A stretch of 64,000 bases of DNA from positions 992,001-1,056,000 of the forward strand of contig JBLDXI010000034.1 in assembly GCA_047495785.1 (NCBI GenBank), in the 5' to 3' direction. The position numbers were made by a program, and so were the translations under genes. Below the pieces are notes generated by a model, which did not search any database, was not told the origin of the DNA, and was given only the letters and a program-made list of their open reading frames with translations. Each line of letters starts with the position of its first letter. The stretch's first letter is position 1. The stretch comes from Lepidodermella squamata. Lineage: Eukaryota > Animalia > Gastrotricha. Below, one piece after another: positions 33,958-58,360 of this stretch.

Positions 33958-36768
33958 ATGATTACCAGCTTGCCATATGAAATCTTGTCGAAAATTTTTA
34001 TTCTCCTTCCTGACCGAGTAATTTTTATTACCTGCTCCGTAGTATGTAAACGGTATTCTTTTTCCATTTCTAAATGTAACCTTTCCTGTCGAGTTTCACT
34101 TGTTTTTAAGCTGGCTTGCTGTGATCAGATCTAACGCGTTTTGGCAAGAATGGTTAGCCCGAGAGTTGAAAATAAGCAACACCTCGACTATTGCTCCATC
34201 GCGCGAAGAGGTAACGAGTCTCCTGAGGTGCGAAGTTCAGTCATACTATGGATCGTACGGCTTTGAAACACTCGACGCCTTGTTGGCTGTTGAAAACAGT
34301 CGACAAAGAGTATCAACGGCCGTCCCGCCTTTTCTCACAGCCGAGGAACAGTCAGCGCCTGGTGTCTACAAGCAAGGCTGGTATTCGTTAAAGCTTAGCC
34401 ATTTCTTCCCAGAAATCGCAAAAGTACTTGGCTTTTTCTTGATAAATCTTTCTAAAGTTTTAATGCTGTCACTCACAGGCGCAATTGCTTGGCTTGAAAC
34501 TTGGTATAAGCTGTTCACATTACTTGAAGGACGAATTTCATCTTTCATTGAATGACGACAACTTTTCTGTCTTCCTTGGCAAACGGGCCGATAAAATGTG
34601 GAGAATTATCGATCCGCATCCTGGTGGCCGTATTTACTCGAGAGATGCCGAGTTCAGGCTGATTTTAACTACTCCGAACCATGCCGTCAAACTCCAAAAA
34701 CAGAAGGTTAACATGTTCTTTATCGTGTCGTTTTCGGGAAAAATTACCGTCGTTTTAGGCGAGTTGGGCAATCCCAGTCGAAAAAAAGTAGACCATGGCT
34801 CGGTCTAAATTCGACACTGGGGTAGATCGTAAGGGTTCGACCCTACGTAGATCGAATGGTAAAATTAGGACCTACACAGGATCGATGCCCGTAGATCCAG
34901 TTTAATAGATCGACAATAGGTCGGAAAAACAACAATTTTGGACGGATATTTTGCCTTTTGGATCTACGTACGATCTACTGAGCTCTCGGTCTACTGATTT
35001 TCGTCTGGGATGAAAAAAAACTACCCCCTGATTTTATAACATATTCAAACGTTTCCAAAGGTCCTGATTCCAAAAATCATCTTATTTTGCCCCAGGTTTC
35101 GGGTCTTGCTCTACCTTCGCCGATTATTTTCCAACGCGATCAAAAACATTTTTCGATGTTTTTACTTTATTTTACTTTATTCTCAGTGTTACTAAGTATC
35201 CTGCAGAATTCTGCATCATCACTTTTAAACCCAGCTTAAGTGCAACTATAAATAAAACAGCTATGTGTATCTGTACCATAGCACTTAGAGTTCTCAAATA
35301 TTGTGTGTCGTACAGGGCAAACAGTTAGTTTCTGTCTCAATTTGTTTTCAATAGAACATGCATTCTCTCTCTCTCAATCTCTCTCCTAATTTATTGATTA
35401 TTAATTTAAAAAAATTGTCAGATTTTTTTGTTAATTCTTAATTTTGGAGTTCGTAGACGCATGAAAATTCTTCTTGCTTAAAAACTTTCAAATTACGTGA
35501 AAACAATTTCAAAAACATTCAAGAGAGGCTTTCCAATGATGCCATAAGACATAAGATAGTTTGGCAGATTGGCTGGCATATTGGCTTCTCGAAATTTGAT
35601 TGCCTTTCAGTTAGATGAATTTTATTTTTCATTGCTTTCAGATATCTGACACTGCGTCGGCAATTCAATTGGTATTCTATCAAAATAGAGAAGAATTAAC
35701 AGCTCTTCTCGAAACCGGAACTGCATCAGCTAACGGATATCGCCTATTCCCACAAGCGCATGGTAAAATTTTCAGGAGGATATTTCATTTCTCTTTGGCT
35801 AGCTACAAACTAATTCTTTAGAGCGTCCCTTGATAGCTGCAGCTGGACTTGGCGACAGTGAAATTCTGCTTCAACTGCTTCGTCACGGGGCCAATGTGAA
35901 TTTAGAAGATACATCTGGGAATTCTCCGTTAGCTTCCTCAATCGAAGCTGGCCTATTGAACAACGCAAAGCTCTTGATTGAAAATGGTGCTTCGATAAAC
36001 AAAAGCGGAGCTCGAAAGCCTGCACTTCATATGGCCGTCGTCAAAGGTAATATCGAAGCTATTGACCTACTCATACACTACGGCGCCGACATCGATATCA
36101 GAAATGAAAACGGCGAAAATTCTGTCCACGTTTTCGCCCGCCTTTTCCTTGATTTAAACTTCAGCTCAGCATATTTCGAAAACCGAAAGATTGTGCTGGA
36201 AGATGCGGATCCTGTTGCGGCTGCCTCCAATACAGCTGGCTTCGACACCCTTAAAGCGTTGAAAGAGCGAAATTTCGACTTCAACGCTGAGTCAAACAAC
36301 GGTTTTACGCCTCTGATGACCGCCTGTGAAAAATGCGACACGAAAATTGCTGGCTGGCTCATCGAATTGGGCGCTGATGTGAATCATGTCTCTACGTCTT
36401 CAATGACGCCGCTTCTAGCTGTGATCTGCTCGAAATCGTTCGTCGAAATCACTGAGCGGCCACTATTAATCAAATTATTGTTGGAAAAAGGCGCTGGTCA
36501 AACCCTGGAGACACGCAATTCTGACAATTTGACCCCGCTCATGGCAACAGTTTGTCTGAGAACTGGCGGCACCTACGATTTCGAGATCTTCAAAATTCTT
36601 ACCGAGGCCGGAGCTGAAGTAAACGTGACTTTGGCCAATGGAGATTCGCTATTCTGCCATCTATTAACGCATCAGATGTTGAAGGAAGCTTCACTGATAG
36701 CCGATCGAATTTCCGATCCGAATGAGGTTCAATCTTCGACCGGAATGACCGGAAATTGGTTTTGGTAA
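33958..36768 (+). CDS. F-box-ankyrin gene copy 1, C-terminally truncated; exons 33958-34052, 34111-34423, 34479-34706, 35642-35762, 35822-36768
   Basis: Exon 1 reads MITSLPYEILSKIFILLPDRVIFITCSVVCKR|W (F-box). Ankyrin repeats include GNSPL, KPALHMA and GFTPLMTA. Homology to the paralogs stops after TGMT, about 100 aa early. Confidence 0.8.
34773..35009. mobile_element. MITE in intron 3 of copy 1, with CCCAG..CTGGG termini and a 2-bp AT TSD (CMC/EnSpm-like)
   Basis: cccagtcgaaaaaaagtagacc pairs with ggtctactgattttcgtctggg, with several internal (G)TAGATC repeats in both orientations. It is absent from the copy 2 intron. Confidence 0.75.
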
Positions 36769-37904: not shown

Positions 37905-40900
37905 CTTTCTTTACCAGATGGCGCTGTGTTCACTTTAGGCTCGTTCACTGCTAATGGCTGCTGTTACACCGTCATCTGTTTGTTTTCCCAAGAATTTTGC
38001 AGAAACTGCTTGAAAATTTATCAAAAATACACTGACAGCTAAAGCCTGATCTAGGTGTAAAAATCGAAATTAAGCTTGTATATTAGACTAGAACCCCTAT
38101 TGGCGACTTCAACCCTCTTTAATAACTAGCTTATCGTTTCAGATTATAATTTCTAGTGATAACTTGCTTTTTCTGACTATTTTTGATAACACAGCCGTGC
38201 TTTTGCTGCTAAGCTAAAAATGAAGGATATGATTAGCAGCCTGCCTTATGAAATCAAGTCGAAAATATTTCTACTCCTTCCAAGCAGAGTCATTTTCATC
38301 ACCTGTTCCCAAGTATGCAAACGGTAATTTTTTAAATTTCTCATTTTTGCCCTCCCCATCGAAGACTTGTTTTTTCAGCTGGCTTGCTGTGATCAGATCT
38401 AACGCGTTTTGGCAAGAATGGTTAGCCCGAGAGTTGAAAATAAGCAATACATCGACTATTGCTGCATCGCGCGAAGAGATAGCAAGGCTCCTGAGTTTTG
38501 AAGTTCAATCATATCATGGATCTTATGGTTTCGAAACACTCGACGCCATGTTAGCTGCAGAGAATAGCCGGCAACGAGTACCGCCAGCTGTCCCGCCTTT
38601 TCTAACAGCCGACGAACATTCAGCGCCTGGTGTCTACAAGCAAGGCTGGTATTCGATAAAGCTTAGCCATTTCTTCCCAGAAATCACTAAAGTAGGCTTC
38701 TTTCTAGTTGGAAATCTCAGTTTTAGTGCTGTCATTCACAGGCGCAATTGCTTGGCTTGAAACTTGGAATATGCGGTTCAAGATATTCGAGGGGCGAATT
38801 TCATCTTTCATTGAATGACGACAACGTTTCAGTTTTTCTTGGCGAACGAGCCGATAAAATGTGGACGGTTATCGATTTGCATCCTGGTGGCCGTATTTAC
38901 TCGAGAGATGCGGAGTTCAGGCTCATTTTCACTACTCCAAACCATGCTTTCCAACTCCAAAAACTGAAGGTTAAATGTTAAATGTTCTTCATCGTGTCGT
39001 TTTTGAATTTTTTTTTACAAATGTTCTGCAAGCTGTAAGAAAATTCTTCCTAGCTCAAAACTTTGCAATAACGTAAAAAACAAGTTCAAAAACCTTCCAA
39101 GAGAGGATTTCAAATTTTGCCAAAAAAATAGGTTGTAATATTGGCAGGCTTCTTTAAATTTGATTGCCTTTCAACTTCACGAATTTTTTCATCGCTTTCA
39201 GATATCTGACACTGCGTCGGCAATTCAATTGGTCTTCGATCAAAATAGAGAAGAATTAACAGCTCTTCTTGAAAACGGAACTGTTGCAGTTAATGGTTTT
39301 CGCCAATTCCTACATGCGCATGGTAAGGGAGGATATTTCATTTCTCTATGGCTAGCTATAAAATAATTCTTTAGAGCGTCCCTTGATAGCTGCAGCTGGA
39401 CTTGGCGACAGTGAAATCCTGCTTCAACTGCTTCGTCACGGGGCCAATGTGAATTTAGAAGATACATCTGGAAATTCCCCTTTAGCTTCCTCAATCGAAG
39501 CCGGCCTTTTGAACAACGCAAAGCTATTGATTGAAAATGGTGCTTCGATAAACAAAAGCGGAGCTCGAAAGCCTGCACTTCATATGGCCGTCGTCAAAGG
39601 TAATATCGAAGCTATTGACCTACTCATACAATACGGCGCCGACATCGACATCAGAAATGAGAAGGGCGAAACTTCTGTTCACGCTTTCGCCCGCCAATTT
39701 CGGGAAATCTACTTCAGCTCAGCATATTTCGAGGGTCGAAAGCTTATGCTGGAAGACGAGGATCCTGTTACGGCTGCCTTCAATACAGCTGGCTTCGCCA
39801 CCCTTGAAGCGTTGAAAGAGCGAAATTTCGACTTCAATAACGCTGAGTCAAACAACGGTTTTACGCCTCTGATGACCGCCTGTGAAAAATGCGACACGAA
39901 AATTGCTGGCTGGCTCATCGAATTGGGCGCTGATGTGAATCATGTCTCTACGTCTTCAATGACGCCGCTTCTAGCTGTGATCTGCTCGAAATCGTTCGTC
40001 GAAATCACTGAGCGGCCACTATTAATCAAATTATTGTTGGAAAAAGGCGCTGGTCAAACCCTGGAGACACGCAATTCTGACAATTTGACCCCGTTAATGG
40101 CAACAGTTTGTCTGAGAACTGGCGGCACCTACGATTTCGAGATCTTCAGAATTCTTACCGAGGCCGGAGCTGAAGTAAACGTGACTTTGGCCAATGGAGA
40201 TTCGCTATTCTGCCGTCTATTAACGCATCAGATGTTGAAAGAAGCTTCTTTGATTGTCGATCGAATTTCCGATCCGAATGAGGTTCAATCTTCGACCGGA
40301 ATGACTCTACTGATGTTAGCTGCACAATTTTTTTATCGAGGCCCTGTTGAGGCGAGGGGCAACGATCGATGAACAGAACGCAATTGATGGTAAAACTGCT
40401 CTGCTGTATGCGTTAGAAGCTGCGAATAAGCCGAATATGACGACGATTTTGAAAAGCACTCGAAACTCAGTCGCAGTTTTGCTCAGGCACGGAGCTGATC
40501 GTTCGCTGCGGGACAAAAATGGACGTAGCGCTGCTGACTACGTTTCCGAGTGCCAGATAAGCTTGTTGAAAATTAACTGCAGTTGTAGCCAATGTTTGAT
40601 TCGCAAATTACTGAACCGTTAAGCCTTGAGACAACTTTATTAGATTTTCTATGGAAGCCAATAAACGCTACAAGTGAACGTGATCGATTCTTCATTTTTG
40701 AACTGAACGCACATCGGACAAAGTTGACAGCAACTAATCATTTATGTCCATGTGATCTTCTAACAGGAAACAGCTTGAATCGAGGTCACAGAACCTGAAA
40801 CCGGACAGCCAATGTAAATTAGTTTGTCCAAGCACGGGAAAACTGTTCTATATCTCCTGTCATTTGAGCTCGGAATATCCAGAAATAATGGCGAGCCAGA

Positions 40901-40953
40901 CCGCTGAAGTGCGTAAATCACGAGCCAGACACGCTTAGTTCATAAGCGTGACC
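37905..40953 (+). repeat. ~3-kb segmental duplication unit; second copy at ~47465-50865
   Basis: Near-identical upstream region, F-box-ankyrin gene and 3' flank (copies 2 and 4). Confidence 0.88.
38220..40622 (+). pseudogene. F-box-ankyrin gene copy 2, frameshifted near 40330; exons 38220-38323, 38379-38691, 38742-38969, 39202-39322, 39375-end
   Basis: Exon 1 reads MKDMISSLPYEIKSKIFLLLPSRVIFITCSQVCKR|W. Relative to copy 4, 17 nt are missing between two T-runs, which splits the ORF (39383-40372 and 40347-40622). Confidence 0.8.
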
Positions 40954-41124
40954 TCGAGTTAATTAGTGTCAATAATCAAACAAGTTAAATGCATCACAGG
41001 CTGACTAAATCGTTAACCATACTCCCATTAGGAAACAGTAACGATAAACTACTCAGGTATAGATTGAGCTTATGAGAAAACGATTAGACTTCTCCTTTCC
41101 AATATATCCGAATCTCATCGCGGC

Positions 41125-41466
41125 ATGAATCCCATATCATTAATTGTTATAAGTCTTTGCCTATTCGAGCACGTTGAGACTTCAAAACTTCCAGCAATGA
41201 GTGAAAGTGAGTTGAACTAGTGGTGGTGGAGATTTCTCTATGATTTCGTATACTCAATAACAGTAACTCGGGCTATGTTGGCGAAAGACGACATTACAAT
41301 GCAGCAGCTCTATCGGAAGCTACGGCAGGGCCGTGACGATTGCAACATTGAGACTTGCATGCGAGTCTTCAATTCGTTGCCGATTTGCCATTCGCGGGGT
41401 TCTTTCTACGTTTGGGCGAGATTGCTGGCGAAGCAAATGGCAGCGGATGTGTCGAAATGCTCCTGA
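41125..41466 (+). CDS. Small secreted 4-Cys peptide, type A copy 1 (exons 41125-41206, 41264-41466; 94 aa)
   Basis: MNPISLIVISLCLFEHVETSKLPAMSE|ITRAMLAKDD...CNIETCMRVFNSLPICHSRGSFYVWARLLAKQMAADVSKCS*. The phase-1 GTGAGT..CAG intron position is shared with the divergent paralog at 59542. Confidence 0.8.
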
Positions 41467-41872
41467 GGCGCCCCGGTGAGTTCGTACTTATACCGAGCGA
41501 GTGCAACTTCACGCTTCACGGTCGCTAACGATTAAATTAAAATTGTTCACTTCAAGCTTGACGTAGCGGAAAATCTAAGTGCACTCTGTTGATAAAAGAA
41601 TAAATTAAAATGTGGGACTCACATGATCAGGCCTCAGATTGACAAGGGAACTGCGACAAAGGGCGTCCGAAACGAAATGCTTGAATGTTCTCATGTCGTG
41701 CTTTTCACGGTTCGTCACGCAGGTCAGAGACCCTGTTCTCGAGCTAAAAATCCTGTGTGCTTGAACTCAAACATCTTCTTTTAATTTCATCAAAAATAAC
41801 CGTATTGACTATCAAATATCAACGAAATACTTCGTAATCGTAAATTTATGGCATAGGTACATACAAATCGAA

Positions 41873-42010
41873 CAGTGAGCGAAGTAGGATCCTCGGGCTA
41901 AGGGCTATGAAGTTTCCGACCAAATGGTCACCCTGTGGCTATTCAGGTTTCATTGCTTTGGCCTCTCGAGTTAAGGAATATGGTACTCCGATCGGTACTT
42001 CGTAAAATTG
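41873..42010. mobile_element. hAT-type MITE family copy
   Basis: cagtgagcgaagtaggatcc ... ggtacttcgtaaaattg. The equivalent copy in the duplicated segment is at ~54675-54820. Confidence 0.65.
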
Positions 42011-42989
42011 GATCGATTCGATTTTGCTCGGAGGGAATGGGCCGCACCTTTTTTGCGGCGGAAACTGGAGACGTAATAGTGTGCCTAATGCCAAATGCCA
42101 AGAACCAACCATTAACTTTCCTCCCTTATTTGTTTTTTTAATATCCAAATTTTGATTTTCATCAGGGTTTTCAAATAAAGAAAGCGTGTGACGGCAGTAT
42201 ATTATCACAAAATTACAGCCGGCCTGCAGATTAACTTTTTAATCCGGTCAATATGAGTGTTGCACTGTCTGAAATGGAATCGGAAGTTGGAATTTTCTCT
42301 AGAGTTCACTATATTTATAAGCGTGGCCTTGAAAATTGAGACTTCCGGTTATACATATGGTATAAACACACGAAGCGCCTTCACGCTTAATTTATGTTTG
42401 ACAACTCGCTGCGCCGCGGAAAATCTGCGCAGAATCCCGTAACTTTAGTGTTTTCTTTCCGCAACGCCACATTTAGTCTTCGGTAGTTGATGTCATTGCG
42501 CCGAGGTAACGTCTTTTCGGGCAACGGCTGCGTGCAGCAGTGTGACTTGGCTGTACTTACCCAAAATTAGGATAGTTTTGGGTTTGCCGTTTGCCATCAA
42601 GGTAAGACTGGACTGAAAATATGCTCGCATGACCTCACTTTACACGTGCTCCGAGAATCGTCTGATCTGTAATTAACCAGCGTCTTGTTAGGTCCGCGGA
42701 GATGCAACTACAACATAACAGCATAATGAAGAACAAAAATAGGAAAAAAGATTAAAAATTAAACGAAAAACAACTATAACTGCCACATTCCTTGTTAGCA
42801 GTCAAGAAATTGCTAGTTTCGAAAATTTGGTGATCAGACCTTCTGAGGACGATCAGGACGTTTTCTTACAACTCTGATTTGTCAATTTTTCTCAAGCAAA
42901 AAGACAAATGATTTGCATCCTCAAAATTTCATAATTTCGAACAAAGAATAAGTGGAGCAGAAGCACTGAATTTTTGAATAAATTATTAG

Positions 42990-45168
42990 CTAAGTACAAC
43001 AGCAGTTAAATACCGACCATCGACAACGCAAACCATAGTCGCTAGCGTTCAGCCCATTTTTGTCTCGCAGCGAACGATTAGCTCCGTGCACCAGTAGAAC
43101 TGAGATGATTTTTCGGTAATCCCTCTCACACATTCTTCGGGTCATAGTTGTGTCCTGCAGCGAGCCGTCAGGTCCACGTTCGAGCGTATTATACATTCGA
43201 TGGATTTGATTGTTGTTCATAATTGTAGCTTCTAATGCATACATCAGTGCAGTTTTGCCGTTAATAGCATTCTGCGCATTGATTTTAGCGCCTCGTCTAA
43301 GAAGAGACTTGATCAAATGCACTTCGCCTACCGCATACCTTGCAGCTAACATCAGCAGTGTCATTCCGGTCGAAGCTTGAACCTCATTTGGATCGGAAAT
43401 TCGATCAACAATCAAAGAAGCCTCCTTGAACAATAGACGCGTCAGTAGTAGGCAAAACAACGAATGGCCTCTGGTAAATGTCACATTTACCTCAGCTCCG
43501 TGCTCGATTAAGATTTTGAAGATTTCGAAATCGTAAAAGCTGCCAATTCCCATATATGCTGTGGCCATGAGTGGAGTGAACTTGTCAGGCGTCTCTAGAG
43601 TTTGACGGGCTCCCTTTCCCAACAATAATTTTACTAAGAGATACCGTTCACAGATTTTGTCTGGCAATTTTGAGCAAATTGTGGCTAGCAGCGGTGTGTT
43701 TGAAAACGCCGAGACATGATTCACATCAGCTCCAAATTCAAGCAACAAGCTAGCAATTTCCAGGTCACTTCGTTCGCAGGCAATCATCAAAGGTGTAAAA
43801 CCGTGGTTAGACATAGCGTTAAAATCAACATTTCGCTCTTTAAGTGCTTTGAGGACGGCAGAGCCAACTTTTTTGAAGAAAGCTGAAAAACCCTCACGAG
43901 ATTGTGAGTAGATTGATTCGACATAATGTGTATGAAAATGGCTTGCAAAAACGTGGACAGAATTTTCGCCGTTCTCATTTCTGATATTGATGTCGGCGCC
44001 ATACTGTATAAGTAGGTCAATGGCTTTAAGGTTACCTTTGGAAACAGCCATATGAAGAGCAGGGTTACATTCGTTGTTAATCCGGGCGCCGTTATCCAGC
44101 AACAGCCTTGCGTTATTTAAAATGCCGGCTTCGATAGCCGATGTTAATGGTGACTTTCCAGCAACGTTTTTTAGGTTCGGATTGGCGCCATGACGAAGCA
44201 GTTGAAGCAATATTTCACTGATGTCGTCAAGTCCAGCTGTGGAAATTAAAGGTCGCGCTTGGAGGTATCCGTTGACCGCTACTGTTCCCTTCTCAAGTAA
44301 AGCAGTTAGTTGTTCAAAATTTTGATCCAGGGCCAGTTGTATGGCTAACTTGGTGTCTGATATCTGAAACCAATAGATCGTAGATCGTAGAAGTGTTAGT
44401 AGACTACAACGAGACCCAGGGTGAATGGATAACTATTCTCCCCTACTTCTTCCATTTTTCCATTTTAAGGATAAATTAGAAGATTCAGCGAAAATCGGCC
44501 AGTATCGGCCAGTATTTTGTAATGTAGCAATCAGTCTCACCTTCAGTTTTTGGAGTTCGACGGCTTGGTTCGGAGTAGTGAAAACCAGCTTGAACTCGTT
44601 ATCTTCCGAATAAAGACATTCAACCTGATCCAGATCAATAACCGTCCACAATTCATCTGTCCCGGCGCCCAGAGACACGGGTGCGTTGCTGTTACTTTTT
44701 CGCACGTAATAAGTATTTTCTGAAAACCCTAAACCGCAAATTGCGAGTTTCAAGCCAAGAAATTTTGCCTGTGAACGACATTATGTACATATATTGAGAA
44801 TCCGCTAACAACATGATTTACGCACTTTTGCGATTTCTGGTGAGAAAAAAATAGAAGATAATCGAAGTTTAACATCCAAGCTGAGCAAACTGATGATGTC
44901 GTCGCGCGATACACCAACTGTTAACTGCGAAATATTTCTGGTCTTGAATTCACGGGCTAACCAGTCTTGCCAAAACGCGTCGGATCTTATCACTGAATGC
45001 CAGCTAAAGAACGAATAAAACCTTTATTTGAAGAATTCCCACAATGGAAGTGAACAGAAAATACCGTTTGCATACTAATGAACAAGTGATGAAAATGACT
45101 CTGTTAGGAAGGAGAAGAAATATTTTCGATTTTACTTCATAGGGCAGGCGGCTGATCACATCAACCAT
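42990..45168 (-). CDS. F-box-ankyrin gene copy 3 (apparently intact, 4 exons)
   Basis: Exon 1 (45168-45065) reads MVDVISRLPYEVKSKIFLLLPNRVIFITCSLVCKR. It is followed by a short in-frame exon 2, exon 3 (AKFLGLKL..LQKLK) and a last exon from ISDTKLA through the ankyrin ORF, ending FNCCCT*. Confidence 0.82.
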
Positions 45169-46850: not shown

Positions 46851-47161
46851 ATGAGGGCCGTATCTTGGGCAACCTTTTCCCTCATTTGCCTCCTCAACGA
46901 CATCGCGGCCTCAAAGTTGCCGCCAATGGGTGAAAGTATGTCATGATATTTTTCTCCGTGAATCGGTATTTATAATGCTTTGCATGTTACGTCACCGTGC
47001 AACTTGCTGCGAAACTTCGCCAGAGCCGCGAAGAGTGCGCGATGAAGTTATGTTTGCAGGTGTTCAGCTCGTCGGCAATATGCTTATTCCAAGGCGCTTT
47101 CTACGTCTGGGCGAGAATGCTAGCGAAACAACTGGCGACAGACTGGTCGAAATGTAAATAA
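46851..47161 (+). pseudogene. Secreted 4-Cys peptide type B copy 1, splice acceptor deleted
   Basis: Near-identical to 59542-59896 but lacks about 44 nt spanning the TAG acceptor and the ITRAMLSKDETSA codons. Confidence 0.75.
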
Positions 47162-47297
47162 TAACCTGACAAATTTGAGCTTGAGGTTCGCTTCATTTCA
47201 TTGCACTTGCGATCGTTTGATCAACTGTTTATTCCACTGTTCATTACGGTAAGGTATGGTAAGGGCTATGGTAAGGGCAAGCTTTCATTACCAGATG

Positions 47298-47464: not shown

Positions 47465-47771
47465 ACCAGATGGCGCTGTGGTCACTTTAAGTTCGTCACT
47501 GTTAATGACTGCTGTTACACCGTCATTTGTTTGCCTTACTCAAGAATTTTGCAGAAACTGCTTTAAAATTTACCAAAAATGTACTGATAGCTAAAGCTTG
47601 CTCTAGGTATAAAAATCGAGATTAAGCTTGTATCTTAGACTAGAACCACTATTGGCGACTTCAACCCTCTTTAATAACTAGCTTATCGTTTCAGATTATA
47701 ATTTCTAGTGATAACTTGCTTTTTCTGACTATTTTTGATAACACAGCCGTGCTTTTGCTGCTAAGCTAAAA

Positions 47772-50535
47772 ATGAAGGATATGATTAGCAGCCTGCCTTA
47801 TGAAATCAAGTCGAAAATATTTCTACTCCTTCCAAGCAGAGTCATTTTCATCACCTGTTCCCAAGTATGCAAACGGTAATTTTTTAAATTTCTCATTTTT
47901 GCCCTCCCCATCGAAGACTTGTTTTTTCAGCTGGCTTGCCGTGATTAGATCTGACGCGCTTTGGCAAGAATGGTTAGCCCGAGAGTTGAAAATAAGCAAT
48001 ACCTCGACTATTGCTGCATCGCGCGAAGAGAAAGCAAGACTCCTGAGTTTTGAAGTTCAATCATATCATGGATCATATGGTTTCGAAACACTCGACGCCA
48101 TGTTAGCTGCAGAGAATAGCCGACAACGAGTACCGCCAGCTGTCCCGCCTTTTCTCACAGCCGAGGAACAGTCGGCGCCTGGTGTCTACAAGCAAGGCTG
48201 GTACTCGAAAAAGCTTAGCCATTTCTTCCCAGAAATCACTAAAGTAGGCTTCTTTCTAGTTGGAAATCTCAGTTTTAGTGCTGTCATTCGTAGGCGCAAT
48301 TGCTTGGCTTGAAACTTGGAATATGCGGTTCAAGATATTCTAGGGGCGAATTTCACCTGTCATTGAATGACGATAACGTTTCAGTATTTCTTGGCGAACG
48401 GGCCGATAAAATGTGGGCGGTTATCGATCTGCACCCTGCTGGCCGTCTTTACTCGAGAGATGCCGAGTTCAGACTAATTTTCACTACTCCAAACCAAGCT
48501 TTCCAACTCCAAAAACTGAAGGTTAACATTTTCTTTATCGTGTGGTTTTCGGGAAAAGTTTTCACAAATTTTCTGCAAGCTGCAAGTAAAGTTCGAAGTT
48601 CAAAAACCTATGAAGTGAGGATTTCAAATTTTGCCAAAAGATAGCTTGCAATATTGGCAGGCATATTGGCTTCTTCAAATTTTATTTTCTTCAAGTACCC
48701 GGGTTTTTTAGCACATCCGCCTAAGTTTCCTCCGCGCTGTAATTAAATTTCTGCAAGATCATGGTAATACATTGGACAGAGCAGTAAAAACTGAATATTC
48801 TTATTTAAAATTCGTATAGAAAAGATTATTATTTGAACGATGGGACTTGCAAAATTGTGCGCACACAAGTCGTGCGCACACATGGCTTTTTAGTATTGAA
48901 AAACCGCGCGCGTCACAAAAGATAGCTTTCGAATTTACCGGCAGTTTTGATATCAAAATGAAATTCATAAAATTTGGAATCGATTGAATATGGGGTTCTC
49001 GCTCGAAAAATCTAAAACAAAATTTTAGCGCGTGACCAACCAATCAGAGTGCGAGCGTGGAGTAAACTTAGGCGGGCCTGATAATGTGCATTTTTTTCAT
49101 CGCTTTCAGATATCTGACACTGCGTCGGCGATTCAATTGGTCTTTGATGAAAATAGAGAAGAATTAACAGCTCTTCTTGAAACCGGAACTGTGGCAGTCA
49201 ACGGATTTCGCCAATTCCTACATGCGCATGGTAAAATTTCAGGAGGATATTTCATTTCTCTTTGGCTAGCTATAAACTAATTCTTCAGAGCGTCCCTTGA
49301 TAGCTGCAGCTGGACTTGGCGACAGTGAAATCCTGCTTCGATTGCTTCGGCATGGAGCCAGTGTGAATTTAGAAGATACATCTGGAAATTCCCCGTTAGC
49401 TTCCTCAATCGAAGCTGGCCTTTTGAACAACGCAAAGCTCTTGATTGAAAATGGTGCTTCCATAAACAATAGCGGAGCTCGAAAGCCTGCACTTCATATG
49501 GCCGTCGTCAAAGGTAATATCGAAGCTATTGACCTACTCATACACTACGGCGCCGACATCGATATCAGAAATGAAAACGGCGAAAATTCTGTCCACGTTT
49601 TCGCCCGCAATTTTCGGGAAATCTACTTCAGCTCAGCATATTTCGAGGGCCGAAAGCTGATGGTGGAAGATGAGGATCCTGTTACGGCTGGCTTCGACAC
49701 CCTTAAAGCGTTGAAAGAGCAAAATTTCGACTTTAATGCTGAGTCAAACAATGGCTTTACGCCTCTGATGACTGCTTGTGAAAAATGCGTCACGAAAATT
49801 GCAGGGTGGTTGATTGAATTGGGCGCCGATGTGAATTATGTCTCTACGTCTTCAATGACGCCGCTTCTAGCTGTGATCTGCTCGAAATCGTTCGTCGAAA
49901 TCACTGAGCGGCCACTATTAATCAAATTATTGTTGGAAAACGGCGCTGGTAAAACTCTGGAAGCTCGCAATTCTGACAATTTGACCCCGTTAATGGCAAC
50001 AGTTTATCTGAGAACTGGCGGCACCTACGATTTCGAAATCTTCAAAATTCTTATCGAACACGGAGCTGAAGTAAACGTGACTTTGCCTAATGGAGATTCG
50101 CTATTCTGCCATCTATTAACGCATCAGATGTTGAAGGAAGCTTCACTGATAGTCGATCGAATTTCCGATCCGAATGAGGTTCAATCTTCGACTGGGATGA
50201 ATCTTCTGATGTTGGCTGCAATGTTTTCAGTTGCGGATGGGTTTTTCATCGAGGCTCTCTTGAGGCGAGGGCCGACGATCGATGAACGGAATGCGGCTGA
50301 TGGTAAAACTGCTCTGCTGTATGCGGTAGAAGCTGCGAATAAACCGAATATGACCACCATTTTGAGAAACACTCGAAACGCAGTCGCGGTTTTGCTCAGG
50401 CACGGAGCTGATCGTTCGCTGCAGGACAAAAATGGACGTAGCGCTGCTGACTACGTTTCCGAGTGCCAGATGAGCTTGTTGAAAATTAACTGCAGTTGTA
50501 GTCAATGTTTGATTCGCAAATTACTGAACCGTTAA
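47772..50535 (+). CDS. F-box-ankyrin gene copy 4 (apparently intact, 5 exons)
   Basis: Same exon structure as copy 2 with an uninterrupted ankyrin ORF at 49297-50535, ending CSCSQCLIRKLLNR*. Confidence 0.85.
48709..49089. mobile_element. Inverted-repeat insertion in intron 3 of copy 4
   Basis: ccgcctaagtttcctccgcgct (~48717) pairs with agcgtggagtaaacttaggcgg (~49054-49075). The segment is absent from the copy 2 intron. Confidence 0.65.
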
Positions 50536-50942
50536 GCCTTGAGACAACTTTTTCAGATTTTCTATGTAAGCCAATAAACGCTACAAGTGAACGTGATCGA
50601 TTCTTCATTTTTAAACTGAACGCACATCGGACAAAGTTGACAGCAACTAATCATTTATGTCCATGTGATCTTCTAAGAGGAAACAGCTTGAATGGAGGTC
50701 ACAGAACCTGAAACCGGACAGCCAATGTAAATTAGTTTGTCCAAGCACGGGAAAACTGTTCTATATCTCCTGTCATTTGAGCTCGGAATATCCAGAAATA
50801 ATGGCGAGCCAGACCGCTGAAGTGCGTAAATCACGAGCCAGACACGCTTTGTTCATAGGCGTGACTTGCAGCTGGTCTTGACGCAGAACGCAGAAGCGAT
50901 CGATACTTCACGTTCGGAGCTTTATTAAATTTCACAGAAAAT

Positions 50943-53144
50943 CTAGACTTGACAGTTCAATAATTTGCGAATCAAACTACAGCTACAGCTGCATTCAATT
51001 TTCAATAAGCTTTCCTGGCATTCCGAAACGTAGCCGGCAGCGCTTTGTCTATTTTTGTCCTGCAGCGAACGATCAGCTCCATGCCTGAGCAAAACTGCGA
51101 CGGCGTTTCGAGTGCTCCTCAGAATTGTGGCCATATTCGGCTTGTTCGCAGCCTCTACCGCATACATCAGCGCAGTTTTGCCATCAACTGCGTTCTGCTC
51201 ATCGATCTTCGCCCCTCGCCGCAACAGGGCCTCGATGAAAAACCCATCCGCAACCGAAAACTTTGCATCTAACATCAGTAGAGTCATTCCGGTCGAAGAT
51301 TGAACCTCATTCGGATCGGAAATTCGATCGACAATCAAAGACGCTTCTTTCAACATCTGATACGTTAATAGATGGCAGAATAGCGAATCTCCATCGTCGA
51401 ATGTCACATTCAATTCAGCTCCGTGTTCTATTAGGATTTTGAACATTTCGAAATCGTTCAAGCTGCCCAGACAAACTGTTGCCATCAACGGGGTGGAATT
51501 GTCAGAATCGCGAGTCTCCAGAGTTTTACCAGCTCCTTTTTCCAACAATAATTTGATTAATAGTGGCCGCTCAGTGATTTCGACAAACGATTTCGAACAA
51601 ATTGTTGCTAGAAGCGGTGTCATTGAAGACGTCGAAACATGATTCACATCAGCGCCCAATTCAATGAACCAACCAGCAATTTTCGTGTCACATTTGTCAC
51701 ACGCGGTCATCAGAGGCGTAAAACCGTTGTTCGACTCAGCATTAAAGTCGAAATTTCGCTCTTTCAACGCATTAAAGGTGGCGAAGCTAGCTGTATTGAA
51801 GGCAGCTGTAACAGGATCCTCGTCTTCCAGCATAAGCTTTCGACCCTCGAAATAGGCTGAGCTGAAGTAGATTTCCCGAAATTGGCGGGCGAAAGCGTGA
51901 ACAGAATTTTCGCCGTTATCATTTCTGATATCGATGTCGGCGCCGTAGTGTATGAGTAGGTCAATAGCTTCGATATTACCTTTGACGACGGCCATATGAA
52001 GTGCAGGCTTTCGAGCTCCGCTTTTGTTTATCGAAGCACCATTTTCAATCAAGAACTTTGCGGTGTTCAAAAGGCCGGCTTCGATTGCTGAAGTTAAAGG
52101 GGAATTTCCAGCGTTGTCTTCCAAATTCACATTAGCGCCATGACGAAGCAGTCGAAGTAACAATTCATTGTTACCAAGACCAGCTGCAACTATTAAAGGC
52201 CGCAATCGGCAAAATCCGTTAATTGCCACTGTCCCGGTTTTAAGAAGAGCAGTTAATTGTTCGCTATTTTGTTGGAAGACCAATTTAATGGCAGATTCAG
52301 TGTCGGATAACTGAAAGCAATGAAAAGTAAAATTCATGTAATTGAAGGGCGTCTCATCGAAGCCGAAAATGTTTACCCTCAGATTTTGGAGTTCGACGGC
52401 ATGGTTCGGAGTAGTGAAAATCAGCCTGAACTTGGCATCTCTTGAGTAAATACGGCCTCGTGGATGCAGATTGATAACCTTCCAAACTTTATCGGCCTGC
52501 TCGCCAAGAAACACGGAGACGTTGTCGTCATTCTCTGACAGGAAAAATTTGCCCTCGGAATCTCTTGAACCGCATATCATAAGTTTCAAGCCTAGCAATT
52601 GCGCCTAGGAGAGAAAGCATTGAAACTAAGACTTTTAGGAAGAAAAACGCCTACTTTTGAGATTTCTGGGTAGAAAGCACTAAAGTTTAACGAATACCAG
52701 CCTTGCTTGTAGACACAAGGCGCTGCCCGTTCCTCGGCTGTTAGAAAAGGATGGACAGCTGGTGGGCTTGGTCGCTGAAAACGCTGATAACGCTGATATT
52801 GCAAAGGGTAAGCTATCACGTAGAAAGGTTGGCGTCGTTTAAGCTGTAATTTTCATGAATTTCACACTTCAGAAGGCTGGTGATCTCTTCACGAGATGCA
52901 TCAATATTCGATGTGTTGCTTATTTTCAACTCTCGGGCTAACCATTCTTGCCAAAATGCGTCAGATCTGATTACCGCAAGCCAGCTGAAAACAACAATCA
53001 AATATCGATTTGGAGGGACATTAAGAAATTTAAAAAATACCGTTTGCATACTTGGGAACTGGTAATAAAAATGACTCGGTTAGGAAGGAGTAGGAATATT
53101 TTGGACTTTATTTCATAGGGCAGGCTGCTAATCATATCCGCCAT
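50943..53144 (-). pseudogene. F-box-ankyrin gene copy 5, frameshift and stop in exon 2 (~52816); downstream 551-aa frame intact
   Basis: Exon 1 reads MADMISSLPYEIKSKIFLLLPNRVIFITSSQVCKR. Exon 2 reaches TGA after NLST, while the homologous PPAVHPFLTAEE continues in another frame. Confidence 0.72.
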
Positions 53145-53808
53145 TTTAGCTTACTGACAAAAACAAATCCACGGTATCAAAACTAGTAAGAAACAACAAG
53201 TTATCACCAGAAATTATAACGTCTAACGATGAGCTAGTTACATTAGAGGGGTGAAGTTGCTGAAAGGGTTTTTACTCGAAGTAAAAGCTTCTCATACTTG
53301 AAATAATCTTTTTATTTCAACAAATTCAGTAGTATGTGAATTAGTTCCTTGAGAATTCTTGAGGAAAGCATAACAAACAGAAGAGTGTATGGAACAGCAG
53401 CCACAAGCGGTGAGCAAGCTTAAATCTATGTCCATGTGATCTACTAACAGGAAAATAGCTTGAATCGAGGTTACGAAATCTATAACCGGACAGCCAATCT
53501 AAATTAGTTTGTCCAAGCACGGGAAAACTGTTCTATATCTCCTGTCATTCAAGCGCAGAATATCCAGAAATAAAGGCGAGCCAGACCGCTGAAGTGCGTC
53601 AATCACGCACCAGACAACTTAGTTCATAAGCGTGACCTCGAGTTAATTAGTGTCAATAATCAAACAAGTTAAATGCATCACAGGCTGACTAAATCGTTAA
53701 CCATACTCCCATTAAGAAACAGTAACGATAAACTACTCAGGTATGGATTGAGCTTATGAGAAAACGATTAGACTTCTCCTTTCCAATATATCCGAATCTC
53801 ATCGCGGC

Positions 53809-54150
53809 ATGAATCCCATATCATTAATTGTTATAAGTCTTTGCCTATTCGAGCACGTTGAGACTTCAAAACTTCCAGCAATGAGTGAAAGTGAGTTGAA
53901 CTAGTGGTGGTGGAGATTTCTCTATGATTTCGTATACTCAATAACAGTAACTCGGGCTATGTTGGCGAAAGACGACATTACAATGCAGCAGCTCTATCGG
54001 AAACTACGTCAGGGCCGTGACGATTGCACAATTGAGACTTGCATGCGAGTCTTCAATTCGTTGCCGATTTGCCACTCGCGGGGTTCTTTCTACGTTTGGG
54101 CGAGATTGCTTGCGAAGCAAATGGCAACGGATTTGTCGAAATGCTCCTGA
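53809..54150 (+). CDS. Small secreted 4-Cys peptide, type A copy 2
   Basis: Near-identical to 41125-41466, with the same intron. Confidence 0.8.
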
Positions 54151-55839
54151 GGCGCCGCGATGAGTTCGTACTTATACCGAGTGAGTGCAACTTCACGCTT
54201 CACGGTCGTTAACGATTAAATTAAAATTGTTCACTTCACGCTTGACGTAGCGGAAAATCTAAGTGCACTCTGTTGATAAAAGAATAAATTATAACTCGGG
54301 ACTCGTATGATAAATCAGGCCTCTGATTGACAAGAGACCAACGACCAAGGGCGTCCGAACATATTAGCCCTCTTCACGGTTCGCCACACAGATCTGAAAT
54401 CCTGCTGTTGAATGTTCTCGAGCTAATATACCATGAGTACGTACTCAATGCTTCCTATCATCTATTGATAACTGCATCAAAATACCTGTAATGACCCTCA
54501 CATAGTCTCTAAATCGAAATATTTCGGCCAGAGAGCGAAGCGGTTGGGATAAGGAAAATCGACATAAGGGTTCCTCCTTTGGCCTTTGACTGAGTTCACC
54601 TTTCGGACCGATTGAACTGGTAGGGATGATCCTCTCTACGGAATCGAAAATTTAGGGTTCACAATCGAATCTTGCTGTGTGCGAAGTTGGATCCTCGAGC
54701 TAAGGGGTACTCTTCGGTATTTACGGCCGAAAAGTTTCCGACAAAATGGCCACCATGTGGTTTTTGAGTTTGGACCTTTCGAGCTGGAATGCCAGTACCC
54801 CGTCGGTACTTTGTAAACTTGGATCGAGCATCTAGTCGGGTAACGGGTAATATGGGCCCATCTTGGGCAAGGGGAAAGACGTAGAGTATCAGTGTACCTA
54901 CTGCGCCAAGAACCAATCATGAGAGCCATTAACTTCTTTCCTTTATCTGTTTTTTTCAATATCCTGATTTTTATTTTTATCAGGGTAATTTTTTAATAAA
55001 GACAGCGTGTGACGGCAGTATATTACTACAGAATTTCAGCCTGCAGCTTGACTTTTCAATCCAGTCAATGTGAGTGTTTTCCACTGTCTGAAATCGAATT
55101 GGACGTCGGAGTCTTCCCTGGCGTTCACTATATATAAGCGTGGCCTTGAAAATCGAGACTTCTCGTTACACATATGGTAAACACATGAATCTTGATTCAT
55201 ATGGAAACGAAACGCCTTCACGCTTAATTTAAGCATTGACAACTCGCTGCGCCACGGAAAATATTTCTAGAATCACGCAGCTCTAGTCTTTTGTTTCTGC
55301 AACGTAGCTTTTTGTCGACGTGAGCTAATGTTGTCGTTGTGCCGAGGTACTGTCTTGTCTGGCAATAGTTGCAGCTCTGTTACTTGGCTGTCACTTACCC
55401 AAAATACGGATTGTTTTGTGTCTGCTATCATGGTATGACCGTACTGAAATCTGCTCGCTTGACCTCACTTAACACGTGCTCCGAGAAAATCTTGGAAAAT
55501 CGTCTGGTCTGTAATTAACCAGAGTCTTTGCACAAGCACTTACAACATAACAGCATAATGAAGAACAAATTAGGAAAACAGATTAAAAATTGAACGAAAA
55601 ACAACTATCATTGTCACATATTCCTTTAAAATTGTTAGCTCTTAAGAAGTTACGAGTTTCGAATTTTTGGTGATTAGACCTTCTGAGGACGCGCAGCTTC
55701 AATTTCAATGTCCTCTCTCTGGCAAACTCTGATTAGTCAATTTTCCAAAGCAAAGAGACACATGTTTTGCATCGTTTAAAATTTAATGATTTCGAACATA
55801 AAGAATAAATGGAGCAGAAGCACTGAATTTCCGAATAAA

Positions 55840-58360
55840 TTAGTGGCTACAACAGCAGTTGAATACCCACCATCGACAACGCAAACCATAATCGCTAGCT
55901 TTCAGCCCATTTTTGTCTCGCAGCGAACGATTAGCCCCATGCGCCAGTAGAACTGAGATGATTTTGCGATAATCTTTCTCACACATCCTTCGGGTCATTG
56001 ATGTGTCCTTCGGCGAACCGTCAGGTCGAATTTCGAGCGAATTGTACTCTCGATGAATTTGATTGTTGTTCAAAATGTTAGCTTCCAACGCATACATCAG
56101 CGCAGTTTTGCCGTCGATTGTATTCTGCGCATTGACCTTAGCGCCTCGTCTAATAAGAGACTCGATCAAATGCACTTCGCCTACCGCTAACTTCGCAGCC
56201 AACATCAGTAGAGTCATTCCAGTCGAAGATTGAACCTCATTCGGGTCTGAAATTCGATCGACTATCAAAGAAGCCTCCCTAAACAATAGGCTTGTTAGTA
56301 GATGGCAAAGCAACGAATGGCCATTGTCGAATGTCACATTCAATTCAGCTCCGTGTTCTATTAGGATTTTGAACATTTCGAAAACGTTCAAGCTGCCAAT
56401 TCCCAGACAAACAGCTGCCATCAATGGAATCATATTTTCAGAATTGCGCGTCTCCAGAGTTTCATCAGCTCCTTTTTCCAACAATAATTTTACTAAGAGA
56501 TACCTGTCACTGTTTTCGACTAGCGATGTTGAGCAAATTGTGATTAGCAGCGGCGTCATTGAAGACGTCGAGACATAATTCAAGTCAGCTCCAAATTCAA
56601 TCAACAAGCTAGCTGTTTCCAGATCACATTGTTCGCAGGCAATCATCAAAGGTGTAAAACCGAGGTCTGACTCAGCATTTAAGTCAAAATTTCGCTCCTT
56701 CAGTGCGTTGAGGGTGCCATAGCCAGCTTTAAAGAAAGCTCTAAAAGCATCATTATTCGCCTTCATGAAATTTTCAGGTTGCGAGTTGTATAGCAGGAAG
56801 AAATACGCATGAAAATTGCGTGCAAAAACGTGGACAGAATTTTCGCCATTCTCATCTCTGATGTCGATGTCGGCGCCGTATTGAATGAGTAGGTCAATGG
56901 CTTCAAGGTTACCTTTGGAAACAGCCATGTGAAGAGCAGGTTTAGAAGCGTTGTTAATCCTGGCGCCGTTATCCAGCAAAAGCCTCACGTTATCTAAATG
57001 GCCGGCTTTGATAGCCGATTTCAATGGTGAATTTCTATAGATGTCTTCTAGGTTCGGATTAGCGCCATGGCGAAGCAGTTGAAGCAATATTTCACTGTCG
57101 CCAAGTCCAGCTGCGATAATTAAAGGTCGCGATAGGGGAAATCCGTTGACTACTATTGTTCCTTTTTCAAGTAAAGAAGTTAATTGTTCAATATTTCGAT
57201 CCAAGAACAGGTTGTCTACTAAGTCGGTGTCTGATATCTGAAACGAACCGGAATTGATTGTAGTTTGTGACGTATAATAGGACACCGAACTAAGAGGTTT
57301 TCGGACACGAAAAACTGAAGTCAGACTTATAAGGCAAAGTTTATAGTTTCAAATTTAGTGAGTTGAATCATGTCATTATTTTCCGCCCCAATATTTCTTG
57401 TGCTATTTATGTTGACTTTTGATCAAATCACGCAAATCACGCAAATTTTGAGCAATTGCTGCAGTTTAATCATCCGCATTCATCTTCAATGATGCATCTC
57501 ATCGAAAACACTAATTTTTGCCATGATTAAAACTTGAACTAATTAATTTTTAATTTTTTAATTTTAATTATTTAACAAATTCGAATGGAGCCCCGTCATT
57601 TTAATTGTGTAGGTTGCAAAATTTTCAGAATATTCATGAGCAGAAAAGCGAACATGTCTTTTTGTCAGCCGACGGGCTCCGAGTGCGGCGTGCGGCGTCC
57701 TATGTACTTTACTTATTTACATAACTTTATTCTCCCCTACTTCTTTCACTTCTCCATAAAGCTTCAATAAAGTTTCAATAAAGCTCAAGATTGGAAAAAA
57801 TAGAAGATTCGGCGAAAACTTTAAGCGTCGATTTTGAATGAAGCAATCAATCTCACCTTCAGTTTTTGGAGTTTTTCAGCTTTGTTCGGAGTAGTGAAAA
57901 TCAGCCTGAACTCGTTATCCGAGTAAACATAGTCAATTTGATCCAGATCAAACACCGTCCACAATTCATCTGTCCCGTTGCCAAGACGCACATTTGCGCT
58001 GCTGTTACTTAGTTTCGCGAAAATATCTTGTAAATATGCTGAACTGCATATTCCGAGTTTCAAGCCAAGAAACTTTGCCTGTGACCACATCGTGTCTATA
58101 TCTATACTGGCAAGCCGCCTACAGCATGATTCATGCACTTCTGTATTGTGCCAAAACGCGTCGGATCGTCGGATCTTATCACCGATAGCCAGCTTTAAAA
58201 AACGAGTAAAATTCGAATACATAGAAGAATTACCCTAATGCTGGTAGTGAATTTACCGTTTGCACACCAATGAACAGGTAATAAAAATGACTCGGCTAGG
58301 AAGGAGGAGAAATATTTTCGAATTGATTTCATAGGGCAGGCTGCTGATAACATCAGCCAT
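55840..58360 (-). pseudogene. F-box-ankyrin gene copy 6; exon 2 shortened and frameshifted by an 8-bp duplication; ankyrin exon intact
   Basis: Exon 1 reads MADVISSLPYEINSKIFLLLPSRVIFITCSLVCKR. The tandem gtcggatc-gtcggatc lies at 58160-58175. The ankyrin ORF 57285-55840 ends FNCCCSH*. Confidence 0.72.

What the first reader, a model, noticed from the sequence alone, without database searches (positions are those of the whole stretch)
33958..58360. Cluster of six spliced F-box + ankyrin-repeat genes (candidate lineage-specific SCF E3 adaptor family)
Seen: each ankyrin ORF is the last exon of a gene whose ~100-nt first exon, absent from the ORF track in its true frame, encodes LPYEIxSKIFLLLPxRVIFITCSxVCKR|W. 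A variable linker exon and a 76-aa exon of unknown fold follow. Copies 3 and 4 look intact and four are damaged. Established: this matches the F-box (Skp1-binding) consensus. F-box plus ankyrin is best known from Legionella AnkB (N-terminal F-box) and from poxvirus and Orientia Ank proteins (C-terminal F-box/PRANC), whereas animal ankyrin E3 adaptors are typically SOCS-box ASB proteins. Inference: a fast-evolving host family of ubiquitin-ligase substrate receptors, possibly immune or conflict-related.
Basis: partly seen in the sequence, partly recalled or inferred. Interest (0 to 1): 0.85.

Follow-up and report, generated by a model that had tools for sequence, protein, structure and literature searches.

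The report
Spliced F-box plus ankyrin gene cluster
An unidentified short-intron animal carries a small, turning-over cluster of spliced genes that join an F-box (the handle of SCF ubiquitin ligases) to a long ankyrin-repeat arm. The design is rare in animals, and nothing here shows an immune role.

Summary
Six paralogous genes lie at 33958-58360. Each has a ~104-nt first exon that, spliced to exon 2, gives a complete F-box (Pfam F-box-like 41.5 bits, cut-off 24.3). A variable linker exon follows, then a 74-76-aa exon with no detectable relatives, then about eleven ankyrin repeats.

All four introns of copy 4 are bridged by GT..AG joints in contigs of a run that behaves like RNA. Copy-1-like and copy-2-like transcripts appear there too.

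- **Intact:** copies 3 (627 aa) and 4 (670 aa).
- **Cut short at the C-terminus:** copies 1 and 2.
- **Broken in exon 2:** copies 5 and 6.

The family proper has eight loci plus one relic, all on one contig. A larger array (at least 20 loci) on another contig shares the same F-box intron position and phase and also ends in ankyrin repeats.

The most likely function is SCF substrate receptor, which is inferred and not shown. No relatives were found in protein, metagenome or viral searches. dN/dS is below 1 across each whole region compared, so the "fast-evolving, immune" reading is not supported.

Earlier scan notes list TRIM-ankyrin and RNF216-ankyrin arrays elsewhere in this genome.

The parts
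33958..36768 (+). Copy 1 (subfamily A), five exons: 33958-34052, 34111-34423, 34479-34706, 35642-35762, 35822-36768. The frame is open for 567 aa, but the ankyrin arm ends early, so about the last 100 aa (repeats 10-12 and the Cys-rich tail) are missing.
   Evidence: All introns are GT-AG. An X1 contig carries the copy-1 end of exon 4 joined to exon 5 (table 5c, compared).
38220..40622 (+). Copy 2 (subfamily A), five exons: 38220-38323, 38379-38691, 38742-38969, 39202-39322, 39375-40622. A frameshift near 40325 in the last exon gives a stop at 40370-40372. The remaining tail is readable in another frame as far as 40622.
   Evidence: A copy-2-like transcript contig with the 15-nt insert typical of copies 2 and 5 is present in X1 (tables 4 and 8).
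42990..45168 (-). Copy 3 (subfamily B), four exons: 45168-45065, 45003-44826, 44768-44541, 44363-42990. Intact at 627 aa, with a short linker exon and no intron 4. It ends in NCCCT.
   Evidence: The spliced F-box scores 41.1 and 38.7 bits. Expression is unresolved: X1 holds only 0.15 of the sampled words of its last exon.
47772..50535 (+). Copy 4 (subfamily A), five exons: 47772-47875, 47931-48243, 48294-48521, 49110-49230, 49289-50535. Intact at 670 aa. Order of modules: F-box, linker, exon-3 module, about eleven ankyrin repeats, Cys-rich tail.
   Evidence: All four introns are bridged by GT..AG joints in X1 contigs (table 5).
50943..53144 (-). Copy 5 (subfamily A), exons 53144-53041, 52984-52655, 52604-52377, 52310-50943. 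Exon 2 is broken: its middle is replaced or diverged, it has 16-17 net extra bases, and it holds TGA and TAG stops. Intron 3 is only 66 nt and in frame, so exons 3-5 read as one 551-aa ORF. There is no intron 4.
   Evidence: Almost no X1 cover (table 2).
55840..58360 (-). Copy 6 (subfamily B), exons 58360-58257, 58192-58139, 58078-57857, 57237-55840. Exon 2 is shrunk to about 15 codons and carries an 8-nt tandem duplication that shifts the frame. The ankyrin ORF is still open (465 codons) and ends in NCCCSH.
18868..19327 (+). Relic of a further copy, 15 kb upstream of the cluster: a frameshifted F-box exon followed directly by a scrap of the ankyrin arm.
   Evidence: tblastn with the copy-4 protein; translation; F-box exon match at C34:1010909.
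49231..49288 (+). Intron 4 of copy 4 (58 nt), present only in copies 1, 2 and 4. It is part of a ~73-nt insertion absent from copies 3, 5 and 6. About 50 nt of it match dispersed sequences on three other contigs at 87% identity.
   Evidence: Alignment A3; own-genome DNA search; alignment with the three other loci; splice joint 49229>49288 in X1.

Best explanation
The stretch holds a birth-and-death cluster of paralogous, spliced host genes of an unidentified short-intron animal.

Each gene encodes, in order:
- an N-terminal F-box split by a phase-2 intron
- a variable linker
- a 74-76-aa beta-rich module with no detectable relatives
- about eleven ankyrin repeats
- a Cys-rich C-terminus

The most likely function is substrate receptor of an SCF (Skp1-Cul1-Rbx1) ubiquitin ligase. 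The F-box would dock on Skp1 and the ankyrin solenoid would hold the protein to be ubiquitinated. The Cys-rich end possibly serves as a lipid anchor.

**Shown:** the gene models, the domain content, splicing of copy 4, transcripts of copies 1, 2 and 4, purifying selection, and a canonical Skp1 gene in the same genome.

**Inferred:** Skp1 binding, ligase function, substrates and any lipidation.

The family proper has eight loci plus one relic on one contig. Two are intact, two are C-terminally truncated but still carry the F-box and nine repeats, and four have lost either their N-terminal exons or most of the arm. It belongs to a wider genome-specific F-box-ankyrin superfamily that shares the F-box intron.
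For: - **Motifs and ORFs:** six motifs, each with an ankyrin ORF.
- **Domains:** Pfam ankyrin E 1e-37 to 1e-51. The spliced F-box clears both Pfam cut-offs over profile positions 1-42.
- **Intact frames:** 670 aa and 627 aa with GT-AG introns.
- **Splicing:** GT..AG joints at all four copy-4 introns, with introns uncovered in X1.
- **Selection:** dN/dS is about 0.1 (F-box exon) and 0.16-0.47 (ankyrin arm).
- **Family size:** the ankyrin arm has eight close copies (62-100% identity), all on contig C34. The next-best matches are 26-38% identical.
- **C7 array:** F-box exons there have the same split position and phase and introns of 49-60 nt, followed by Pfam-confirmed ankyrin ORFs.
- **Skp1:** an intronless 162-aa Skp1 with both Pfam domains is present.
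Against: - No binding evidence. Docking of the own Skp1 with the 34-aa exon-1 peptide gave no answer.
- No single contig links exon 1 to the last exon, because each joint sits on a separate short contig.
- X1 is RNA only by its behaviour, not by its record.
- Expression of intact copy 3 is unresolved.
- Most copies are damaged, so the family may be decaying.
- Some F-box proteins act outside SCF complexes (general knowledge).
Confidence: 0.7

Rival explanations
1. The genes came by horizontal transfer from an intracellular bacterium or a giant virus (Legionella AnkB-like, or the N-terminal F-box plus ankyrin genes of amoebal giant viruses) and were then domesticated.
For: N-terminal F-box followed by ankyrin repeats is the arrangement described for AnkB and for giant-virus genes (PMC4353913; PMC7830128). 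Many of the best ankyrin hits are bacterial or metagenomic.
Against: - There are four spliceosomal introns, one of them inside the F-box.
- The same F-box intron position and phase occurs in at least ten genes on another contig.
- G+C content is the same as in the surrounding DNA.
- Ankyrin hits reach only 22-47% identity (most 25-30%) with no specific donor.
- No relative was found in viral contigs.
- There is no CaaX end.
Confidence: 0.05
2. The family is a diversifying recognition system, immune or conflict-related. The ankyrin arms would be selected to change and track pathogen or selfish-element targets.
For: - Tandem and inverted duplication with rapid gain and loss: two of eight loci are intact.
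- The exon-3 module and one loop between repeats are the most variable parts.
- Per earlier scan notes, the genome holds many other E3-ankyrin arrays (not tested here).
Against: - Over whole regions no dN/dS exceeds 1. Among 40-codon windows the only ones at or above 1 (up to about 2) are three windows in the copy 3 - copy 6 comparison, which involves broken copy 6.
- Very low dS in parts of the arm between copies 4, 5 and 1 suggests gene conversion that homogenises the arm.
- The neighbours are not immune genes.
- There are no expression data under challenge.
Confidence: 0.15
3. The F-box is a fossil and the proteins act as plain ankyrin scaffolds, or the whole cluster is non-functional and decaying.
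For: Copies 5 and 6, and copy 7 outside the window, keep open ankyrin ORFs of about 450 codons while their N-terminal exons are broken. Six of eight loci are damaged.
Against: - The F-box exon is the most constrained part, with dN/dS about 0.1 at dS 0.5-2.4.
- It keeps the LP, the hydrophobic core and the CKRW of the consensus in every copy.
- Two copies are fully intact and at least three are transcribed and spliced.
Confidence: 0.1

Closest known systems
Cellular F-box proteins of the FBXO ('other domain') class, substrate receptors of SCF ligases
   Same: N-terminal F-box that clears both Pfam cut-offs, a linker, then a C-terminal protein-binding repeat domain. Skp1 is present in the genome.
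   Different: The binding domain is ankyrin repeats. [quoted passage not shown] There is also a 74-76-aa module with no relatives and a Cys-rich end.
ASB proteins (ankyrin repeats plus SOCS box, Cul5 receptors)
   Same: An ankyrin solenoid serves as the substrate arm of a cullin-RING ligase receptor, and the family is multi-copy.
   Different: The handle here is an N-terminal F-box (Cul1 route), not a C-terminal SOCS box. No SOCS-box match was found in any of the four ankyrin ORFs scanned at E up to 1.
Legionella AnkB and the N-terminal F-box plus ankyrin genes of amoebal giant viruses
   Same: Same order of domains: F-box first, ankyrin repeats after it (PMC4353913, PMC7830128).
   Different: These are intron-bearing host genes with about eleven repeats and no CaaX box. 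No sequence relative was found in viral contigs. That AnkB is short, with few repeats and a CaaX end, is from my own knowledge.
Poxvirus, Orientia and parasitoid-wasp ANK/PRANC proteins
   Same: Ankyrin repeats combined with an F-box-like Skp1 handle, in multi-copy families.
   Different: The order is reversed, since PRANC is C-terminal. The PRANC model scores only 13.8 bits against a cut-off of 25.8.
F-box-ankyrin array on contig C7 of the same genome (about 835-957 kb) and two loci on C66
   Same: The F-box is split at the same codon and phase by a 49-60-nt intron and followed by Trp. The C-terminal ORFs are ankyrin repeats by Pfam.
   Different: The middle region differs and has no exon-3 module. 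The ankyrin arm is shorter (about 250-300 aa) and there is an extra basic N-terminal extension. The arm is not among the close matches of the C34 arm.

Membership tests
F-box protein (SCF substrate receptor) | F-box domain above the curated Pfam cut-off | tested here: met
   Spliced exon 1-2 of copies 4 and 3: PF12937 scores 41.5 and 41.1 bits (cut-off 24.3), PF00646 scores 32.8 and 38.7 bits (cut-off 20.5), over profile positions 1-42. Exon 1 alone scores 24.1 bits.
F-box protein (SCF substrate receptor) | F-box near the N-terminus, followed by a separate protein-binding domain | tested here: met
   The F-box covers residues 5-47 of 670. Ankyrin repeats run from about residue 216 to the end.
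F-box protein (SCF substrate receptor) | Binds Skp1 and assembles with Cul1-Rbx1 | tested here: inconclusive
   A Skp1 gene is present. Docking of Skp1 with the 34-aa exon-1 peptide scored 0.29 against a mark of 0.34, which counts as no answer.
PRANC / poxvirus-type ankyrin F-box proteins | C-terminal PRANC domain behind N-terminal ankyrin repeats | tested here: not met
   PF09372 scores 13.8 bits, E 0.075, against a cut-off of 25.8, and the match lies on the N-terminal exon. The domain order is reversed.
ASB (ankyrin plus SOCS box) | C-terminal SOCS box | tested here: not met
   No SOCS-box family is listed for any of the four complete C-terminal ankyrin ORFs at E up to 1.
Legionella AnkB-type effector | Bacterial, intron-less gene with a C-terminal CaaX farnesylation box | tested here: not met
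   The genes have three or four spliceosomal introns, with RNA joints for copy 4. The C-termini read NCCCT, NCCCSH or ...CLIRKLLNR, and none is a CaaX box.

The most novel reading that the evidence does not exclude
This animal lineage may have built a whole class of ubiquitin-ligase receptors on ankyrin arms. That class would include about 30 or more F-box-ankyrin genes in two arrays, beside the TRIM-ankyrin and RNF216-ankyrin arrays that earlier scan notes report. In this reading the C34 family, with its exon-3 module and Cys-rich (possibly lipid-anchored) end, is a membrane-tethered SCF receptor set that recognises changing targets such as pathogens or selfish elements.
Probability: 0.12. 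Interest if true: 0.7.

Novelty: new variant of a known kind. Interest (0 to 1): 0.42.

Why it matters
Characterised cellular F-box proteins use WD40, LRR or miscellaneous domains as their substrate arm. Ankyrin arms are known on the Cul5/SOCS-box route (ASB proteins) and in pathogen mimics (AnkB, PRANC).

A transcribed, selectively maintained host family that puts an ankyrin arm on a canonical N-terminal F-box shows that the combination also arises in animals. It also offers a host-side comparison for the bacterial and viral mimics.

Together with the other E3-ankyrin arrays noted in this genome, it suggests a lineage-wide preference for ankyrin repeats as the recognition module of ubiquitin ligases. 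The cluster also gives a dated example of gene birth and death, gene conversion and a probable intron gain from an inserted repeat.

Tried and rejected
- **Docking:** own Skp1 (L063:1492-1977:-) with the exon-1 peptide scored 0.29 and 0.28, under the 0.34 mark, so there is no verdict. This is not evidence either way.
- **AlphaFold2 on the 553-aa copy-5 stretch (window 50946-52604), single sequence:** mean pLDDT 39.7, unusable.
- **AlphaFold2 on the exon-3 module with its 7-row alignment:** pLDDT 56.4, six strands and a C-terminal helix. Fold searches gave nothing: best Foldseek E 1.2, best VIA Z 4.5, generic beta-sandwiches. My guess that it is PH-like remains unsupported.
- **ESM Atlas look-alikes of exon 3:** best score 0.82, low recognition, Rep-protein clusters; taken as chance.
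- **Exhaustive profile search with exon 3:** one hit, a 1513-aa repeat artefact matching a 16-residue stretch ten times; rejected.
- **Word-based searches:** only generic ankyrin proteins with the 551-aa ORF; nothing with residues 1-132.
- **Other collections:** no relatives in metagenome contigs or viral contigs.
- **Organism:** not identified. A neighbouring SLC41 gene is about 50% identical to arthropod, mollusc, hemichordate and cnidarian proteins alike.
- **Horizontal origin:** considered and rejected (see rivals).
- **Positive selection:** looked for in pairwise and 40-codon sliding-window dN/dS, with no convincing signal.
Full report
**Observation**

The L of LPYE lies at + 33970, + 38241 and + 47793, and at - 45147, - 53123 and - 58339. 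Each motif lies upstream of a long ankyrin ORF on the same strand. Pfam gives ankyrin families at E 1e-37 to 1e-51 for these ORFs.

The window is eukaryotic, with about 42% G+C and no compositional break at the cluster. It is G000:C34:992001-1056000 of a 121-Mb assembly.

**Gene models**

In copy 4 the first exon (47772-47875) ends two bases into an Arg codon at a GT. Exon 2 (47931-48243) starts behind an AG with the third base of that codon, then Trp. Exon 3 is 48294-48521, exon 4 is 49110-49230 and exon 5 is 49289-50535. Joined, they give an open 670-aa frame.

The same boundaries hold in the other copies:
- **Copy 3** is an open 627-aa frame with GT-AG introns.
- **Copy 1** is open for 567 aa, but its ankyrin arm stops about 100 residues early, after repeat 9.
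- **Copy 2** has a frameshift near 40325 at almost the same point.
- **Copy 5** has a diverged, 16-17-base-longer middle of exon 2 with TGA and TAG stops.
- **Copy 6** has exon 2 reduced to about 15 codons and an 8-nt tandem duplication that shifts the frame.

Two of the damaged ones keep the F-box and most of the arm.

Only copies 1, 2 and 4 have intron 4. In copies 3, 5 and 6 exons 4 and 5 are one exon. In copy 5 intron 3 is a 66-nt in-frame stretch, which explains its 551-aa ORF.

**RNA evidence**

Two public runs hold this DNA. X2 covers every bin and behaves as DNA. X1 (2015, marked "RNA?") covers exons only.

X1 has contigs with GT..AG joints at exactly the four predicted introns of copy 4: 47874>47930, 48243>48294, 48519>49108 and 49229>49288. 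One X1 contig carries the copy-1 version of the end of exon 4 joined to exon 5 (table 5c). Another, 702 nt long, carries the 15-nt insert typical of copy 2 (tables 4 and 8). Copy 5 is almost uncovered.

No single contig spans exon 1 to exon 5. Expression of copy 3 is unresolved, because X1 holds only 0.15 of the sampled words of its last exon.

**Domains**

- **F-box.** Exon 1 alone scores 24.1 bits for F-box-like, just under the cut-off, over profile positions 1-29. The spliced exon 1-2 peptide of copies 4 and 3 scores 41.5 and 41.1 bits for PF12937 and 32.8 and 38.7 bits for PF00646, over positions 1-42. The gain on splicing independently supports the splice model.
- **No PRANC or SOCS box.** PRANC scores 13.8 bits, well under its cut-off, and no SOCS box is found.
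- **Exon 4** reads as a first, capping ankyrin repeat. By eye the arm has about eleven repeats, with a variable insert after repeat 4.
- **C-termini** are Cys-rich: NCCCT, NCCCSH, or CSCSQC followed by nine more residues. None is a CaaX box.
- **Exon-3 module (74-76 aa)** has 21 invariant columns among seven copies but no relatives. There was nothing real among 1.84 billion representatives, nothing in a targeted word search and only weak look-alikes in the ESM Atlas. Its model (pLDDT 56, six strands and a helix) matches no fold convincingly.

**Size and kin of the family**

The exon-2, exon-3 and ankyrin queries find the six copies and two more on the same contig, 25 and 41 kb past the window's end:
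- **Copy 7** has broken exons 1-3 but an open ankyrin ORF.
- **Copy 8** has good exons 1-3 and an arm cut off after three repeats.
- **A relic** lies at 18868-19327.

The ankyrin arm has no other close copy in the genome; the next matches are 26-38% identical. Two subfamilies exist: A (copies 1, 2, 4, 5) and B (copies 3, 6, 7, 8). Self-comparison shows duplicated blocks of 5-9 kb that include flanking DNA.

The F-box exon has weaker matches in about 25 further places, mostly on contig C7 between 835 and 957 kb. In ten sampled genes there, the F-box is split at the same codon and phase by a 49-60-nt intron and followed by Trp. The downstream ORFs are ankyrin repeats by Pfam, and the middle region is different. 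The genome has at least 100 F-box-like matches in all.

**Selection**

Pairwise Nei-Gojobori values:

| Region | dN/dS |
|---|---|
| F-box exon | 0.05-0.23 |
| Ankyrin arm | 0.16-0.47 |
| Exon 3 | 0.09-0.89 |

No whole-region value exceeds 1. Among 40-codon windows, only three in the copy 3 - copy 6 comparison reach or exceed 1 (up to about 2), and that comparison involves broken copy 6. In columns 81-140 of the arm alignment, dS falls to 0-0.08 between copies 4 and 5 and between copies 4 and 1, against 0.07-0.9 in the other windows of those comparisons. This points to gene conversion.

The pattern is birth and death under purifying selection, not demonstrated diversifying selection.

**Mechanism**

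A canonical, intronless Skp1 (162 aa) is present, with a second spliced copy.

The best-supported reading is that these proteins are SCF substrate receptors. The F-box docks on Skp1 and the ankyrin solenoid selects the substrate. This step is inferred from established knowledge of F-box proteins. The docking test with the exon-1 peptide gave no answer.

**Origin**

Several results argue against a recent bacterial or viral source:
- spliceosomal introns
- an F-box intron shared with the C7 array
- G+C content matching the surrounding DNA
- no viral relatives
- only generic ankyrin hits

The organism itself could not be placed. A neighbouring SLC41 gene is about 50% identical to proteins of many animal phyla.

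**Comparison with what is known**

[quoted passage not shown] It adds that N-terminal F-box plus C-terminal ankyrin is predicted in some eukaryotes and giant viruses (PMC4353913). So the design is rare and uncharacterised in animals, but not a new kind of system.

Earlier scan notes, which I did not test, report TRIM-ankyrin, RNF216-ankyrin, SOCS-box and FBXO28 arrays in the same genome. These fit a lineage-wide use of ankyrin arms on ubiquitin ligases.

**Verdict**

The domain reading is right. The "fast-evolving, immune" reading is unsupported. I rate it a new variant of a known kind, of moderate interest.

Noticed in passing
window 49218-49290 (also 35750-35823 and 39310-39376): Intron 4 of copies 1, 2 and 4 sits inside a ~73-nt insertion that copies 3, 5 and 6 lack. 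Of it, 58 nt are spliced out (RNA joint 49229>49288) and 15 nt stay as five extra codons. About 50 nt of the insert match sequences on contigs C4, C24 and C3 at 87% identity. This looks like an intron gained from an inserted dispersed repeat.
   Followed up: partly
G000:C7:835000-957000 and C66:59000-67000 (loci L054-L061): A second, larger array of F-box-ankyrin genes (at least 20 F-box exons, spaced about 2-3 kb). It has the same F-box intron position and phase, a different middle region and a shorter ankyrin arm.
   Followed up: partly
window 48772-49145 (intron 3 of copy 4): In the DNA run X2 the summed contig depth jumps from about 100 to 434 and then 4031, with many loose ends at 48979-49027. 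This points to a high-copy repeat inside the 588-nt intron.
   Followed up: no
window 40740-41671 / 53424-54359; 41910-42990 / 54732-55840; 46337-47225 / 59044-59960: Flanking DNA is duplicated together with the F-box-ankyrin genes, at 94%, 78% and 76% identity. I did not examine it.
   Followed up: no
tail alignment columns 81-140 (about window 49430-49610 in copy 4 and the matching parts of copies 5 and 1): Synonymous divergence falls to 0-0.08 between copies 4 and 5 and between copies 4 and 1, against 0.07-0.9 in the other windows of those comparisons. This suggests gene conversion within ankyrin repeats 3-4.
   Followed up: partly
C-termini at window 42993-43010 (-), 55843-55863 (-), 50485-50532 (+): The proteins end in Cys clusters: NCCCT, NCCCSH, or CSCSQC followed by nine more residues. 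This may be an S-acylation site, and it is not a CaaX box.
   Followed up: no
window 30943-33312 (+) and 29297-30625 (-): The immediate upstream neighbours are an intronless 789-aa ORF with an ANF-receptor ligand-binding domain, resembling a class-C receptor, and an SLC41/MgtE transporter gene about 50% identical to those of many animal phyla.
   Followed up: partly
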